The notes under the pieces are model-generated. The model searched no databases. It saw nothing but the letters and a program-made list of their open reading frames with translations, and was not told the origin of the DNA. A stretch of 64,000 nucleotides of DNA, from the IMG/VR virus record IMGVR_UViG_3300031884_000002, positions 248,001 to 312,000 of that record. One strand, written 5' to 3'. The position numbers and the translations under genes were made by a program. Of this stretch, positions 47,032-51,294 are shown piece by piece; the first letter of the stretch is position 1; the number at the start of each line of letters is the position of its first letter.

Positions 47032-50000
47032 TTATAGTATTTCCTTTATATTTACCTCATCTAACATAGATGGTAATGTTGATTCTTTAATCAATTCTTT
47101 TTTTACATCAATAGGCTTGTCAAAAAACTCAGATAAAGACAATATTAACTTGGAGTTTCTGTTTTTCATTTGTTTATTATCTTGTACCGGTTTTTTTATT
47201 TCTTCAAGTGCATATGGAGAATCTCCTTCAAAGTTTTGATATAATTCGCTTTTCTTTTTAAACTCGCTATTCTTTCTTGGTTTTCTATTGAGTTCTAAAT
47301 GTCCCAATGGGTCTTCTCCAAATGGATGATCGCTCGCCTTATGCTCTCCACTTTGGTCTCGATTAGCATCTTCTTTAACTATATCTTCCGGTTTTCCGAT
47401 TTTAGGCTTCTCTTCGGTTTCGGGATTTGGTTCTTCTTCATTTCCCTCTCCTCCTTCTTTATTCCCTTCTCCCTCCTCACCCTCTCCTTCTAAATCTCCA
47501 AGATCGGAAAGTCCACCTCCACCACCATGTCCTCCACCACCACCGAGACCACCCAATCCACCACCTTCTCCTTTTTCTCCACCTCCACCACCCGTTCCTA
47601 TTTTCTTCATAGGCATAGCTGGATCATCTCCATCATTTTCAATAGCCGCCAATCTATATTTGCGTTTTGCGAACTCTATTACTGATTTCATTTCCGTTTC
47701 AATATCATCATTAGACATTTGGAATATATATTTATAGATATATTCAGGAGAAAATAAACCACTTTCCATCATATCTGTAGACAATGCTGTTTTTTCAGAT
47801 AAAATGCTTATTTTCTCTTTTTCTAATATAGTACTAGAATTAGTTAGTTCAATTTTGAAATTGATTAAACTTTCATCTCTATATCCCTGAGCATATAAAT
47901 GTATAACTCCTATCTTTTCCAATTCCACGCACAGTATTTTCTGAATACGTTGAATAGTTCGGGCAAATCGTATATCTTCATTGCTTAATGTTGCCTTACT
48001 ACCACCTTCTTCTCCAAAGTTTAAGAATGTTTTTGGTATTTTTAAAGCGGCAAACATCTTATTTTTAAGATATTCAACATCATCAATACCTGTCCAATCC
48101 ATACCTGGTAGAGTATCTATTCTAGTTCCCGAATCACTTCCACGAGTAGGGATATAAAAGTCATCCAACATATTTTGAAGATTGAACTTGAGATTATATT
48201 CTCCTCGTTCATTCATATATGGAACTTTTTTAATTTTATCCTGTAATTTCTGCATGTAATTATCAACTTCGGCTGGTGGAATGTTGCCTATATCAACATA
48301 AAATATTCTTCTTTCGGGAGCACGAACTACACGATGAATCATCATTGCGTCTTCCAATAGGGATAATTGTTTCCATATTCTTCTTGCACCTTCCAAATAA
48401 GAACGACCATATGGGAAGAAGTTAGAATCGCCCGTTAATCTAAAATGGCAAATCTGCCAGTTTTCCAATACTTCGGCTTGGGATGTATCAGTCGGACGGA
48501 TTTGAAACTTGACATACTTCTTATTATAAGGGTCGGCATTTTCAATTCGCTCTACATTTTCCGCATTTATAGGCTCCACCATATAAACACCATACTCTGG
48601 ACTAACATATACTTTTAAAAAATGATCTCCTAATTTTAAAGTATTTCTAAGCCATCCCCATAAATTAAAGTCTAGGTTTAAAATATCATCGTATAAGTTT
48701 TCAAGTATTTCTTTAACATTATTATTTTCACAGTGTACGGTAAGCATTTTACCAAGTGCATTAGTCGTAAGACAATTATGGGTAAATAATTTAGATCCAT
48801 CCTTAGTTTCTATCGCATATAAATGTGAACTAGTTCCTACATTTACTAAATCATATGCTTTATATTCGCCACATGGTTCTACTGATATTACTCTATGATT
48901 ATTTGATTTTGTATAATCAGCGTATGAGTTATATCCTATAATTTTATATTTTAATCTATCTATACGAGTAATATTATATTTATTACATATTTGTTTATTT
49001 AATACACTACAATCTTCTCTGAGAATGTTATATTTCTGTTTTAATTCTTTTCTAGATAATCCGTTTATTATATCTTTTTCATATTCCTCCATATTTATGT
49101 GTTCGAAACGATTTACGGCTTCAATCCATCTTCCGTTTTTATTTTTGGTTAACTTATAACCATTTCCAAACATTCCATTCTTATTTCCATTTCTTCCAAA
49201 CTCTTTATTTCTATCTTCTTTAGACATTCCTTCCAGTCGCTTTAACATAGTAAAATGACAATTTTCGGAATGATATTTTCTAGTTTCATCATTCCAATAT
49301 CTTCTATGTCCTTCTCTGGTTTTTTCTTTATATTCGTGTGTTTTTGTTTTATCTGCCCATATTTCTTTATTAAATTGAGAGTGTATTTTTTTATGCTCTA
49401 TATAACCAACCCATTTAAGATATTCTGGACTATTATTTAATTTATTAAACGACGAATGATGAATTACTTTATCGGTTTCACATACTGTTTCTCGCTGAGT
49501 TATTAACGAAGGTTCATTTTTTGCAACTAATCTATGAGTAAATTGCCATTTTCCATTTATATATAACATCTCATATCCATTCATAAATTTGAAATTGGAT
49601 AATTTAGTATTAAATATTTTTAACGATGTCCCTAATTCAAGTTTATCGGTTGATATAATAGACATATCTGATTTTACCCACATATGATTAGACGTACATT
49701 TTATCTCGGTTCCATCGTCCAATAATACTTTATACATTGGTTTAATACCATTATATGCCACTCGTTCACATTTTTCGGGTTTGAAGTTCCCATCGGAATC
49801 TATAGAATATACCCAGAAATCTGTTTTATTTTGATTATATAAATCTTCAATTTTTACTTTATCTCCATTCAATAATGGTATAATAGTGTTCCCCTCTATG
49901 CATTCGTCTGCTACAATATCTAAAGTTGCATTTAGAATTGGGTCCATATCCATTGTATTGTGTGAAAATACAGTATCTGATGCAAAATTTTGATATTTTT

Positions 50001-51294
50001 CAACTGTTACATCATATACATCTATTTCTCCGACATATTCTATGGATTTTACTTTATGATTTAATTTAGTAAAAATCTCTTGTTTAAACGATTTCCAGTT
50101 ATGATTGTTAGATTTTAATCGATTGGTTATAAGTGATATATCACAATGTAAATATTTAGATACTTCTTTAAGATTTAATTTTCCATAATTTCTATAATAC
50201 TCAAAAGATTGCTCTTTTATTATATCAAATGTTAATTCGTCTCTATAATTTGGATTTTTTCCTAAATTATAATTTCTGGTTTTACAATATGTTTTTAATG
50301 ATTTAGAACGTACTTCATTAGATTCTTTCGTATGTATTTTTCCATAAAATGGATTATTAGTTCCAGATCTTTCACCATTCCAATGATGAAACTTTCTATT
50401 TTTATATCCTTCGGAAGAATGTATTTTTTCTAATGTTTTTTGTTTATTTTCAAACGACCACATTTTATCAGTTACTAATTTAATATGATATTGTTTATGT
50501 GCTGTTTTATCCATTATAACTAAATTATCCGGCATATTATATGATGGATTGAACTGTTGATGATGAACCACTTCATTATCTTTGAGAGGTCTATTAAATT
50601 GTTCTGCTATTACATTGTGTTCTGGTTGCCATCCTTTTGAAAAATTATAAACATGCCTATATCCTTTGTTATAAAAATCTTTTTGATAAAACGGCATTAT
50701 AGAGTCCCCTACTTTTATATCTTCTAATTTTTTATAATCTCCATTTCTCATTAAGAACGGATGTCCTCCGCTTGCTATTATATATTTACCCTTTTCAAAT
50801 GTTAATTTCCATGCTTTTAATTTTCCTCCATCTTTTTTTCTTGGATGATATGCATTTCCCAATTTTATAGAGTTTGATTCGTGGTCATAAGAATAAACAT
50901 AAAATCTTTCTTGTGGTTTATTTTTATATTTTTCAGCCAACTCTGCTATTGTAGGATACGTTCCATCTGGCAGTGGAATGATAGTTTCTCCTGCCACACA
51001 TTGATAATCCCTAAACATTTCAATACGAGCCGCTTGATAAGATAATGAAAAGTCTCTAGAATATGCATTATACGCAGTTGAACGAATACGATTAAATCTA
51101 TCTCGGAGAGAGTTTCTATCTCCTGCCATCATCGAATGGTCGGTGTCTTTAACAATTAATTGTTTTCCACCGACATTTCTAACTATTGTTTCTGATGAGA
51201 ATAAAGTTTTTAACCGAGCATATAAAGATTGTTTCTTTATATCTACGATATCATCGTTAATTGAATTTGGTCTATTTATTTGGTTAAGTGCCAT
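47032..51294 (-). CDS. gp20: portal protein (T4 gp20-like) precursor with two inteins
   Basis: PYGRSYLE, WKQLSLLEDAMMIHRVVRAPERRIFYVDIGN, DDFYIP.RG, IDTLPG, ALKIPK, EDIRFARTI; spliced product 696 aa. Confidence 0.95.
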   Translation of the reverse strand: MALNQINRPNSINDDIVDIKKQSLYARLKTLFSSETIVRNVGGKQLIVKDTDHSMMAGDRNSLRDRFNRIRSTAYNAYSRDFSLSYQAARIEMFRDYQCVAGETIIPLPDGTYPTIAELAEKYKNKPQERFYVYSYDHESNSIKLGNAYHPRKKDGGKLKAWKLTFEKGKYIIASGGHPFLMRNGDYKKLEDIKVGDSIMPFYQKDFYNKGYRHVYNFSKGWQPEHNVIAEQFNRPLKDNEVVHHQQFNPSYNMPDNLVIMDKTAHKQYHIKLVTDKMWSFENKQKTLEKIHSSEGYKNRKFHHWNGERSGTNNPFYGKIHTKESNEVRSKSLKTYCKTRNYNLGKNPNYRDELTFDIIKEQSFEYYRNYGKLNLKEVSKYLHCDISLITNRLKSNNHNWKSFKQEIFTKLNHKVKSIEYVGEIDVYDVTVEKYQNFASDTVFSHNTMDMDPILNATLDIVADECIEGNTIIPLLNGDKVKIEDLYNQNKTDFWVYSIDSDGNFKPEKCERVAYNGIKPMYKVLLDDGTEIKCTSNHMWVKSDMSIISTDKLELGTSLKIFNTKLSNFKFMNGYEMLYINGKWQFTHRLVAKNEPSLITQRETVCETDKVIHHSSFNKLNNSPEYLKWVGYIEHKKIHSQFNKEIWADKTKTHEYKEKTREGHRRYWNDETRKYHSENCHFTMLKRLEGMSKEDRNKEFGRNGNKNGMFGNGYKLTKNKNGRWIEAVNRFEHINMEEYEKDIINGLSRKELKQKYNILREDCSVLNKQICNKYNITRIDRLKYKIIGYNSYADYTKSNNHRVISVEPCGEYKAYDLVNVGTSSHLYAIETKDGSKLFTHNCLTTNALGKMLTVHCENNNVKEILENLYDDILNLDFNLWGWLRNTLKLGDHFLKVYVSPEYGVYMVEPINAENVERIENADPYNKKYVKFQIRPTDTSQAEVLENWQICHFRLTGDSNFFPYGRSYLEGARRIWKQLSLLEDAMMIHRVVRAPERRIFYVDIGNIPPAEVDNYMQKLQDKIKKVPYMNERGEYNLKFNLQNMLDDFYIPTRGSDSGTRIDTLPGMDWTGIDDVEYLKNKMFAALKIPKTFLNFGEEGGSKATLSNEDIRFARTIQRIQKILCVELEKIGVIHLYAQGYRDESLINFKIELTNSSTILEKEKISILSEKTALSTDMMESGLFSPEYIYKYIFQMSNDDIETEMKSVIEFAKRKYRLAAIENDGDDPAMPMKKIGTGGGGGEKGEGGGLGGLGGGGGHGGGGGLSDLGDLEGEGEEGEGNKEGGEGNEEEPNPETEEKPKIGKPEDIVKEDANRDQSGEHKASDHPFGEDPLGHLELNRKPRKNSEFKKKSELYQNFEGDSPYALEEIKKPVQDNKQMKNRNSKLILSLSEFFDKPIDVKKELIKESTLPSMLDEVNIKEIL
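48775..49902 (-). mobile_element. intein 2 (376 aa) with HNH homing endonuclease
   Basis: starts CIEGNTIIPL, block B CTSNH, ends AYDL..FTHN followed by Cys; internal THRLVA..VIHH..NKLNNSPEYL. Confidence 0.92.
49957..51000 (-). mobile_element. intein 1 (348 aa) with HNH homing endonuclease
   Basis: starts CVAGETIIPL, ends VYDVTV..NF..VFSHN followed by Thr; internal EHNVIA..VVHH..N..PDNL and NUMOD3. Confidence 0.92.

What the first reader, a model, noticed from the sequence alone, without database searches (positions are those of the whole stretch)
48775..51000. Two HNH inteins in the portal gene separated by an 18-aa extein
Seen: C...HN|TMDMDPILNATLDIVADE|C...HN|C. The inteins are 348 and 376 aa, both with HNH-type nucleases (intein 1 also with a NUMOD3-like motif) rather than LAGLIDADG, and have similar N-termini (CVAGETIIPL / CIEGNTIIPL). 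Known: inteins mostly occupy replication/packaging ATPases, yet the adjacent terminase is intein-free. With insertion sites 54 nt apart, homing sites and co-conversion tracts may overlap, and splicing could gate head assembly.
Basis: partly seen in the sequence, partly recalled or inferred. Interest (0 to 1): 0.6.

Follow-up and report, generated by a model that had tools for sequence, protein, structure and literature searches.

The report
Two HNH inteins in phage portal
The only portal gene of an uncultured 354-kb freshwater phage is interrupted by two related self-splicing protein elements (inteins) just 18 amino acids apart; each carries an HNH homing nuclease, and the same stretch of the gene turns out to be an intein hotspot in hundreds of related phages.

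Summary
Confirmed. Window 47032-51294 (-) is one open 1420-codon T4-type portal gene. Its parts are N-extein (98 aa), intein 1 (348 aa), an 18-aa extein, intein 2 (376 aa) and C-extein (580 aa). Both inserts have all class-1 intein signatures, and both carry an I-HmuI-like HNH nuclease between the splicing halves. The two inteins are paralogues. A natural intein-less allele (L004) reads straight through both sites, so the boundaries are exact.

The sites correspond to about residues 80/81 and 98/99 of T4 gp20, at the ends of the first two wing-domain helices.

The case is not unique. In 80 related portal loci sampled without regard to occupancy, site a was filled in 9 and site b in 1. A protein search found 259 long homologues, and all 120 examined carry inteins. 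The same 18-aa pair occurs in five more proteins, a 9-aa pair (a+c) in four or more, and a 13-aa pair elsewhere. There are at least nine insertion sites, with up to five inteins in one portal.

Splicing and homing are inferred, not shown. Overlap of the two homing sites and gating of head assembly remain untested. This is a new member of known kinds, and a useful natural system for studying how neighbouring inteins interact.

The parts
47032..51294 (-). Portal precursor gene, 1420 codons plus stop. It is the only Portal_T4 match in the 353,772-bp genome.
51001..51294 (-). N-extein, aa 1-98, ending ...EMFRDYQ.
   Evidence: It is 98% identical over 85 aa to the intein-less allele L004.
49957..51000 (-). 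Intein 1 (site a), 348 aa, class 1. Cys1 (CVAGETIIPL), block B SGGH, block F VYDVTVE, terminal SHN, +1 Thr447.
   Evidence: IMG/VR holds 32 allelic relatives at 47-64% identity, all at the same site.
50479..50577 (-). HNH nuclease core of intein 1 (NEVVHH...N..N.PDNL...AHKQYH).
   Evidence: Pfam HNH_3; PHROG HNH 2e-10; invariant H/H/N/H/H columns; the family profile hits I-HmuI 1u3e at E 3.3e-5.
50317..50379 (-). NUMOD3-like DNA-binding motif of intein 1 (GTNNPFYGKIHTKES).
   Evidence: Pfam NUMOD3 19.8 bits against a cut-off of 20.4. The motif is conserved in all site-a inteins, and PF07460 is precomputed on several homologues.
49903..49956 (-). Middle extein, 18 aa, TMDMDPILNATLDIVADE. In the portal model it is a short turn plus wing helix H104-117.
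48775..49902 (-). Intein 2 (site b), 376 aa, class 1. Cys1 (CIEGNTIIPL), block B TSNH, block F AYDLVNV, terminal THN, +1 Cys841.
   Evidence: AlphaFold model has pLDDT 85, and the best fold matches are mini-inteins such as Ssp DnaB and Npu DnaE. Allelic relatives are L070, L099-L102 and L107.
49375..49473 (-). HNH nuclease core of intein 2 (DKVIHH...N.LNNSPEYL...EHKKIH).
   Evidence: PHROG HNH 1.3e-6. Aligns with the HNH core of intein 1. Invariant H148 H149 N157 H170 H174. The model shows strand-strand-helix at residues 145-182 with pLDDT 85-93.
47035..48774 (-). C-extein, 580 aa. It holds the portal core (wing, stem, clip, crown) and a Gly/acid-rich tail.
   Evidence: Portal_T4 E 5.5e-64; PHROG portal 7.5e-57; 96% identical to L004.
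51344..52957 (-). Large terminase subunit, intein-free (context).
43273..43899 (-). Prohead core serine protease (context: T4-type head module).

Best explanation
The gene encodes a T4-type portal precursor carrying two cis-splicing class-1 inteins.

**Splicing.** After translation each intein folds its HINT domain. Splicing then runs through Cys1 (N-S acyl shift), the +1 nucleophile (Thr447 for intein 1, Cys841 for intein 2; trans-esterification) and the terminal Asn (succinimide formation). This excises the intein and joins the flanks. The product is a 696-aa portal whose sequence across the two junctions matches the natural intein-less allele L004, apart from the two residues that flank site a.

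**Why both must splice.** The inserts sit at the ends of the first two helices of the wing domain. This is the only portal gene in the genome. Both inteins must therefore splice before a dodecameric portal can form.

**Mobility.** Each intein carries, between its splicing halves, an I-HmuI-like HNH nuclease followed by a helical DNA-binding region, which is NUMOD3-like in intein 1. This is the homing module: it would cut or nick an empty allele in a co-infecting phage, and repair would copy the intein in.

**Origin.** The two inteins are paralogues, related also to the inteins at sites c, d, g, g2 and h of the same gene in relatives. The family has most likely colonised neighbouring sites by occasional ectopic insertion.

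**Shown:** the anatomy, the exact boundaries, the homology, the fold, the presence/absence polymorphism and the distribution. **Inferred:** splicing, nuclease activity and homing.
For: - **Open frame and motifs.** The frame is open for 1420 codons and all intein blocks are intact.
- **Family matches.** Pfam gives Intein_splicing, Portal_T4 and HNH_3. PHROGs gives HNH families for both inteins.
- **Empty allele.** L004 reads ...FRDYS|SMDMDPILNATLDIVADE|CLTTN... It is 96-98% identical in the exteins and has nucleophiles (Ser, Cys) at both +1 positions.
- **Intein-less relatives.** About 60 more distant relatives, and phages Mel-JY01 and immuto, lack both inserts.
- **Independent occupancy.** Site a alone is filled in more than 100 proteins and loci. 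Site b alone is filled in about 10. Both are filled in the window, L070, P0003, P0004, P0017 and P0033.
- **Decay stages.** Endonuclease-less mini versions exist: L097 and L157 at site a, L102 at site b. P0017 and P0033 appear to carry short site-b inserts of about 115 aa, judged from BLAST gaps only. These are the decay stages expected of a homing cycle.
- **Catalytic residues.** HNH residues are invariant across 24 site-a and site-b inteins. The family profile hits I-HmuI.
- **Intein 2 fold.** The model has pLDDT 85 and its best fold matches are inteins.
- **Position in the portal.** In the L004 model, site a lies at the end of helix 60-100 and site b at the end of helix 104-117. Model residues 92-491 align with T4 gp20 residues 74-515, Z 22.5.
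- **Single portal gene** in a record rated 100% complete.
- **Persistence in nature.** The identical protein was seen on 16 contigs. The DNA stretch is present in 16 lake-water runs. In an independent 2023 freshwater run, error-free contigs cross every junction.
Against: - No experiment shows splicing or cleavage.
- Pfam does not call HNH in intein 2. HNH_3 in intein 1 is at threshold: 24.9 bits against 24.8 in the full protein, and 20.2 when the intein is scanned alone.
- The nearest sampled relatives of either intein are only about 64% identical, and intein divergence is about as large as extein divergence. No recent transfer event is caught directly, so the nucleases could be inactive.
- The -1 residue at site a is Gln here but Asp in all other occupied alleles. 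Its effect on splicing is unknown.
Confidence: 0.9

Rival explanations
1. Both inteins still splice, but their HNH nucleases are dead or no longer find targets. On this reading the pair is a vertically inherited relic rather than an active mobile element.
For: - Intein identity to all sampled relatives is flat at 57-64%, similar to extein divergence.
- The window's site-a intein sits on a long branch.
- No intein-less joints were seen in the runs that hold this phage.
- Mini-inteins show that nuclease loss does happen in this family.
Against: - HNH residues are invariant in 24 sequences, and most alleles keep the nuclease at full length.
- The closest extein relative (L004) is empty, and a+b doubles need 5 state changes on the site-a intein tree. 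Gain and loss are therefore ongoing on the family's time scale.
- Read laying saw assembled contigs only, and contigs drop rare variants.
Confidence: 0.3
2. Splicing is conditional (on redox state, temperature or assembly state) and works as a post-translational gate on portal formation, and so on head assembly. The two tightly spaced inteins may impose an order.
For: - Both inteins use Cys1 and intein 2 has a Cys at +1, so they could be redox-sensitive. Conditional splicing is documented for other inteins (titles and abstracts of PMC6195587 and PMC4513877).
- The sites lie in the N-terminal wing region, and deleting the N-terminal region of T4 gp20 blocks head assembly (PMC4493910).
Against: - Occupancy is sporadic: 9 of 80 at site a and 1 of 80 at site b in the unbiased sample. 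The closest relative has neither insert, which argues for a selfish element rather than a conserved regulator.
- No regulatory feature was found.
Confidence: 0.1
3. The inserts do not splice. They stay in the mature portal as extra domains, or the gene is a dead pseudogene or an assembly chimera.
For: There is none beyond the lack of experimental data.
Against: - All catalytic residues are intact and the frame is open.
- It is the only portal gene in a complete genome.
- The same architecture was assembled independently in L070, in P0003 and P0004, and in an independent run.
- Homologous portals do not keep these segments.
- About 80 kDa of insert at the ends of two short wing helices is hard to reconcile with the conserved portal fold.
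Confidence: 0.03

Closest known systems
HNH-type (non-LAGLIDADG) inteins of phages and cyanobacteria, first noted by Dalgaard et al. 1997 as cited in 10.1101/2025.01.02.630785
   Same: A class-1 HINT splicing domain with an in-frame HNH nuclease inserted between blocks B and F. The type is rare and found mostly in phages.
   Different: The host here is a T4-type portal. The nuclease is I-HmuI-like with a NUMOD3-like tail. No relative closer than 21-27% identity exists in the 50,697 deposited phage genomes.
Portal-protein inteins of prophages and actinobacteriophages (SPP1 gp6-type, COG2369: PMC4760082; PhagesDB surveys: PMC5050341 and 10.1101/2025.01.02.630785)
   Same: Inteins inside the portal gene of tailed phages, polyphyletic and at several insertion sites.
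   Different: Those sit in a different portal sequence family and are mostly LAGLIDADG. Here the family is Portal_T4 (PF07230), with at least nine sites, up to five inteins per protein, and HNH or mini types predominating.
Neighbouring MCM-a / MCM-d inteins of Haloferacales (PMC10643990)
   Same: Two or more insertion sites close together in one essential ring-forming protein. Alleles with none, either or both occur in nature. The question of co-homing versus interference is the same.
   Different: The MCM inteins are LAGLIDADG and archaeal, and homing was tested in vivo. Here the pair is 54 nt apart (27 nt for a+c), the two inteins are paralogues, the host is a phage, and nothing has been tested.
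I-HmuI (PDB 1u3e) and other free-standing phage HNH/NUMOD homing endonucleases
   Same: The HNH catalytic motif plus the N-terminal region align with the intein family profile at E 3.3e-5. A NUMOD3-like motif follows.
   Different: I-HmuI is encoded in a group I intron and acts as a nicking enzyme. Here the module is embedded in a protein-splicing domain, and its cleavage mode is unknown.

Membership tests
Class 1 intein (HINT / Intein_splicing PF14890) | N-terminal Cys or Ser (block A) | tested here: met
   C99 (CVAGETIIPL) and C465 (CIEGNTIIPL). Cys1 is invariant in 24 family members.
Class 1 intein (HINT / Intein_splicing PF14890) | Block B TxxH with conserved His | tested here: met
   Intein 1 has SGGH (Ser in place of Thr) and intein 2 has TSNH. 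The His is invariant.
Class 1 intein (HINT / Intein_splicing PF14890) | Block F Asp, penultimate His and terminal Asn (block G), followed by Cys, Ser or Thr at +1 | tested here: met
   VYDVTVE...SHN|T447 and AYDLVNV...THN|C841. The terminal Asn and block F Asp are invariant.
Class 1 intein (HINT / Intein_splicing PF14890) | Exact in-frame insertion relative to an intein-less homologue | tested here: met
   L004 reads FRDYS|SMDMDPILNATLDIVADE|CLTTN. Only the -1 and +1 residues at site a differ.
Class 1 intein (HINT / Intein_splicing PF14890) | Profile score above the curated cut-off, and HINT fold | tested here: met
   PF14890 scores 66.4 bits for intein 1 and 36.7 bits for intein 2, against a cut-off of 35.8. 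The intein 2 model (pLDDT 85) best matches Ssp DnaB and Npu DnaE inteins, E 8e-8. The fold of intein 1 was not modelled.
Class 1 intein (HINT / Intein_splicing PF14890) | Protein splicing activity | not testable with these tools
   Inferred from intact residues and from this being the only portal gene.
HNH homing endonuclease (HNH_3 PF13392, I-HmuI-like) | His...Asn...His catalytic motif on a strand-strand-helix metal finger | tested here: met
   HH/N/H/H columns are invariant. The intein 2 model has strands 145-149 and 162-166 and helix 167-182 at pLDDT 85-93. The family profile hits 1u3e at E 3.3e-5.
HNH homing endonuclease (HNH_3 PF13392, I-HmuI-like) | Pfam score above the curated cut-off | tested here: inconclusive
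   Intein 1 scores 24.9 bits against 24.8 in the full protein, but 20.2 when scanned alone. Intein 2 has no Pfam HNH hit. PHROG HNH families score 2e-10 and 1.3e-6.
HNH homing endonuclease (HNH_3 PF13392, I-HmuI-like) | Site-specific cleavage of the empty allele, and homing | not testable with these tools
   Indirect evidence only: presence/absence polymorphism, mini-intein decay forms, and doubles scattered on the tree.
NUMOD3 DNA-binding motif (PF07460) | Profile match above the cut-off | tested here: inconclusive
   19.8 bits against 20.4, E 7.6e-4, in intein 1 only. The motif GxNNPFYGKxH is conserved in site-a inteins.
T4-type portal protein (Portal_T4 PF07230, gp20) | Profile match above the cut-off, gp20 fold, and position in a head module | tested here: met
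   214.9 bits against 22.9. The model of intein-less allele L004 aligns with T4 gp20 at Z 22.5 and Foldseek E 7.5e-20. The gene is flanked by the large terminase and followed by the prohead protease. It is the only hit in the genome.

The most novel reading that the evidence does not exclude
The first two wing helices of T4-type portals are a hotspot where one family of HNH inteins has repeatedly hopped between adjacent sites (a, c, b). This has produced co-occupied tandem pairs with exteins of only 18 or 9 aa; a second, related pair (e, f) has 13 aa. At such spacing the nuclease target of one intein would include the other's insertion site. Occupancy of one site would then alter homing into the other, and the two HINT domains might have to splice in a fixed order. 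That would make these portals the tightest natural system for intein-intein interference or cooperation.
Probability: 0.3. Interest if true: 0.65.

Novelty: new member of a known kind. Interest (0 to 1): 0.5.

Why it matters
1. It extends the list of intein hosts to the T4-type portal. In one freshwater phage clade this structural, non-ATPase protein is invaded as heavily as replication proteins are elsewhere: at least nine sites, and up to five inteins in one protein.

2. The 18-aa and 9-aa tandem pairs, together with natural empty, single and double alleles, offer a ready-made test bed for questions raised by the haloarchaeal MCM work. Do neighbouring inteins help or block each other's homing? 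Do they co-convert? Is there a splicing order?

3. The site-a and site-b inteins are compact Cys1 inteins with different +1 residues (Thr and Cys). They tolerate a very short shared extein, which may interest people building orthogonal tandem-splicing tools.

4. Practically, portal genes of 3-7 kb will be misjudged by marker-gene pipelines unless the inteins are masked.

Tried and rejected
- **Global alignment of the precursor.** Aligning it with the intein-less portals of Mel-JY01 and immuto scattered the short exteins. I replaced this with direct inspection and with the near-identical empty allele L004.
- **Sequence searches against PDB.** phmmer and a profile matched gp20 only from about residue 238 onward and did not reach the insertion region. 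Folding L004 and aligning structures solved the mapping.
- **Joined exteins.** Exteins were searched separately by reference, and the natural allele L004 stood in for the spliced product.
- **Double-intein alignment.** In alignment A3 the site-b inteins aligned onto the site-a half because the two are homologous. It was unsuitable for folding the double precursor, so only intein 2 was folded. Intein 1 and the whole precursor were not.
- **Deposited phage genomes.** They hold no close relative of either intein; the best matches are 21-27% identical.
- **Reads.** Only assembled contigs were available. No intein-less joint was seen, which does not exclude rare empty alleles.
- **Horizontal transfer test.** Intein identity is flat against extein identity and gave no clear signal.
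- **Tree.** The FastTree of site-a inteins has weak support. Starred branches force only 2 of the 5 changes.
- **Not used.** The large representative-protein search and the complex predictor, because no claim needed them.

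
Full report
**1. Observation**

Window 47032-51294 on the minus strand is a single open frame of 1420 codons.
- N-extein: aa 1-98
- Intein 1: aa 99-446, 348 aa, window 49957-51000
- Middle extein: 18 aa, TMDMDPILNATLDIVADE, window 49903-49956
- Intein 2: aa 465-840, 376 aa, window 48775-49902
- C-extein: 580 aa, starting at Cys841

Pfam finds Portal_T4 on the C-extein (E 5.5e-64) and Intein_splicing above threshold on each insert. In intein 1 it also finds HNH_3 at threshold and NUMOD3 just below threshold. PHROGs assigns both inserts to HNH-endonuclease families and the C-extein to the portal family. 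It identifies the upstream gene (51344-52957) as an uninterrupted large terminase.

**2. Exact boundaries and an empty allele**

A scan of IMG/VR with the C-extein returned contig L004. Its portal is 96% identical in the C-extein and 98% identical over 85 aa of the N-extein, yet it is only 699 aa long. It reads ...FRDYS|SMDMDPILNATLDIVADE|CLTTNALGK....

At the DNA level the flanks are 85-89% identical. The only amino-acid differences near the sites are the two residues that flank site a: Ser-Ser in L004 against Gln...Thr in the window. Both empty sites already carry a nucleophile at +1 (Ser and Cys).

Sixty more distant relatives, and the cultured phages Microcystis Mel-JY01 and Flavobacterium immuto, also lack both inserts. 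The segments are therefore insertions, not portal domains.

Exteins were searched separately by reference, and L004 served as the natural equivalent of the spliced product.

**3. Intein anatomy**

Both inserts have the full set of class-1 features:

| Feature | Intein 1 | Intein 2 |
|---|---|---|
| Block A | Cys1 | Cys1 |
| Block B | SGGH | TSNH |
| Block F | VYDVTVE | AYDLVNV |
| Terminus | SHN | THN |
| +1 residue | Thr447 | Cys841 |

The two are paralogues: 27% identity over 227 aa, E 7e-15.

Between blocks B and F each carries an HNH core:
- Intein 1: VVHH...N..N.PDNL...AHKQYH
- Intein 2: VIHH...N.LNNSPEYL...EHKKIH

The His, His, Asn, His and His columns are invariant in 24 family members. 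A profile of the family hits the phage homing endonuclease I-HmuI (PDB 1u3e) at E 3.3e-5.

An AlphaFold model of intein 2 has mean pLDDT 85 and pTM 0.70. It shows a beta-rich HINT domain, a strand-strand-helix unit at residues 145-182, and a helical region. Its best PDB matches are mini-inteins such as Ssp DnaB, Npu DnaE and Mtu RecA. Intein 1 was not folded.

**4. Where the sites lie in the portal**

The L004 portal was folded with 30 intein-less homologues. The core has pLDDT 70-90 and the tails are disordered. Its best structural match is T4 gp20: Foldseek E 7.5e-20, and VIA Z 22.5 with model residues 92-491 aligned to gp20 residues 74-515.

Site a follows residue 98, at the end of helix 60-100. 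Site b follows residue 116, at the end of helix 104-117. The 18-aa extein is therefore a short turn plus one short helix.

This corresponds to about gp20 residues 80/81 and 98/99, at the very start of the ordered wing domain (residues 70-254). In T4 the first 73 residues are disordered, and deleting the N-terminal region blocks head assembly (PMC4493910). The residue correspondence comes from the aligned ranges and from a by-eye match to the gp20 fragment printed, so it is approximate.

**5. Distribution**

*Searches with the inteins as query.* Intein 1 retrieved 32 IMG/VR loci at 47-64% identity. Every one lies in a portal at the same site: FRDYD|C...N|TMD.DP. Intein 2 retrieved 4 loci at site b: ADE|C...THN|C. 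L070 has the same a + 18 aa + b layout, with inteins of 348 and 376 aa.

*Occupancy-blind sample.* I scanned IMG/VR for a degenerate DNA pattern encoding the conserved N-extein peptide just upstream of site a. All 80 loci returned were portals of this clade. Among them:
- Site a was occupied in 9, one of them a mini-intein.
- Site b was occupied in 1, site c in 1 and site d in 2.
- None carried a+b.
- In empty alleles, the +1 residue at site a is Thr 33, Ser 23, Val 8, Gly 7.
- In empty alleles, the +1 residue at site b is Cys 46, Ser 14, Thr 5, Ala 4.
- About a fifth of empty site-a alleles therefore lack a splicing nucleophile. They could accept the intein only with co-conversion of the flank.

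*Word-based protein search for long homologues (781-2485 aa).* It found 259 proteins at E <= 1e-10. All 120 examined have Portal_T4 plus Intein_splicing, and some are labelled by JGI as intein/homing endonuclease. Classified:
- About 100 carry site a only.
- a+b occurs in the window's protein, P0003, P0004, P0017 and P0033.
- a+c occurs in P0026, P0058 and P0080, and in loci L079 and L094. The extein between them is only 9 aa: TMDMDPILS.
- About six carry site b only.

*Further sites*:
- d: RNM|P...KN|CKYGD
- e: PYGK|C
- f: KQL|C, 13 aa after e; the two are co-occupied in L003 (GenBank LR756508), L100 and L113
- h, g and g2

L113 carries five inteins. P0050 is 2297 aa long.

Inteins at sites a, b, c, d, g, g2 and h are mutually related (E 1e-9 to 1e-33), and those at e and f form a second group. 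Tightly spaced neighbours are therefore paralogues, which suggests ectopic spread to nearby sites.

On a FastTree of 120 distinct site-a inteins, the six a+b rows need five state changes. Doubles are therefore not one co-inherited lineage. Support is weak: starred branches force only two of the five changes.

**6. The phage and its persistence**

- The window is part of a 353,772-bp IMG/VR virus record rated 100% complete.
- The genome has one portal gene.
- The head module follows the T4 order: terminase, portal, several unknown ORFs, then prohead protease.
- The identical precursor protein was recorded on 16 contigs.
- The 2.6-kb stretch is held in full by 16 lake-water metagenome runs. These may include the source sample.
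- It is held at 82% of sampled words by an independent 2023 freshwater run. There, error-free contigs cross the N-extein/intein 1 junction, the intein 1/extein/intein 2 junctions (a 796-nt contig, 49800-50595) and the intein 2/C-extein junction.
- No intein-less joint was seen, but only assembled contigs were available.

**7. Mechanism and rivals**

The best-supported account is ordinary cis protein splicing of two independent class-1 inteins, giving a 696-aa portal. Each intein carries an I-HmuI-like HNH homing module. Splicing of both is required, because the inserts interrupt the first wing helices of the only portal gene.

Whether the nucleases are still active is open. Conserved catalytic residues, presence/absence polymorphism and mini-intein decay forms favour an ongoing homing cycle. 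Against this, the nearest sampled relatives are only about 64% identical, and no recent transfer is caught.

Conditional splicing as a gate on head assembly is possible but unsupported, and the sporadic occupancy argues against a conserved regulatory role. Non-splicing domains or an assembly artefact are effectively excluded.

**8. Relation to what is known**

- Portal inteins are documented for SPP1-gp6-type portals (PMC4760082) and for actinobacteriophages (10.1101/2025.01.02.630785).
- In-frame HNH inteins are known but rare (same preprint).
- Neighbouring inteins that interfere with each other's homing were studied in haloarchaeal MCM (PMC10643990).
- I found no paper describing inteins in T4-type (gp20) portals.
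- No close relative of these inteins exists in deposited phage genomes.

The finding is thus a new member of known kinds. Its main added value is the discovery of a heavily invaded portal clade with very tight co-occupied intein pairs.

Noticed in passing
window 41506-43239 (-): A 577-aa free-standing ORF beside the prohead protease. It matches the PHROG 'homing endonuclease' family phrog_3339 (E 2.8e-117) and Pfam DUF7487, with weak Mom and MTES_1575 restriction-endonuclease-like hits. It is probably another selfish nuclease gene in the head module.
   Followed up: partly
Own genome outside the window: G000:C1:161001-166000 (L104) and 188001-204000 (L103): Several replication and nucleotide-metabolism genes are broken into adjacent ORFs that end or begin with half-intein matches: class II ribonucleotide reductase, DnaB-like helicase, RecA-like protein and dUTPase. 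DUF559/Vsr-like nuclease ORFs lie between the pieces. From my own knowledge, this is the 'fractured gene' split-intein arrangement described from marine metagenomes.
   Followed up: partly
L113 (IMGVR_UViG_3300028241_000181), portal ORF starting at about 2603: A related portal carries five inteins, at sites c, e, f, h and g2. The one at f is LAGLIDADG-type, and the one at h starts with Pro.
   Followed up: partly
L079, L085 and L094 (site d); L113 (site h): These inteins begin with Pro instead of Cys and have Cys in block F (YCM[TN]V) where class-1 inteins have Asp. This looks like class-3 inteins, yet they are clear paralogues of the class-1 site a and b inteins, E 1e-19 to 1e-21.
   Followed up: partly
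L003 = GenBank LR756508.1 142096-151721, ORF 3668-7828: An unannotated 484-kb 'huge phage' genome has a 1386-aa T4-type portal with three inteins. Two are mini-inteins separated by a 13-aa extein (sites e and f). The third is an HNH intein at site g.
   Followed up: partly
window 47380-47613 (-), portal aa 1228-1305: A Gly-rich then acidic low-complexity tail sits near the portal C-terminus and causes a local GC spike (0.42 against about 0.28). Relatives have comparable GGDLGG-type tails, and the region is predicted disordered.
   Followed up: no
L097/L157 and L092/L093 (site a); L102, L100, L101 and L107 (site b): The allelic inteins vary in length. Minis of 165-189 aa lack the nuclease. One site-a form has a 40-aa deletion. 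Site-b forms of 424-429 aa carry an extra insertion of about 50 aa. This is consistent with different stages of a homing cycle.
   Followed up: partly
window 54753-57950 (-): A 1065-aa SbcC-like subunit of a palindrome-specific endonuclease (PHROG 77, E 4e-55), upstream of the packaging genes.
   Followed up: no
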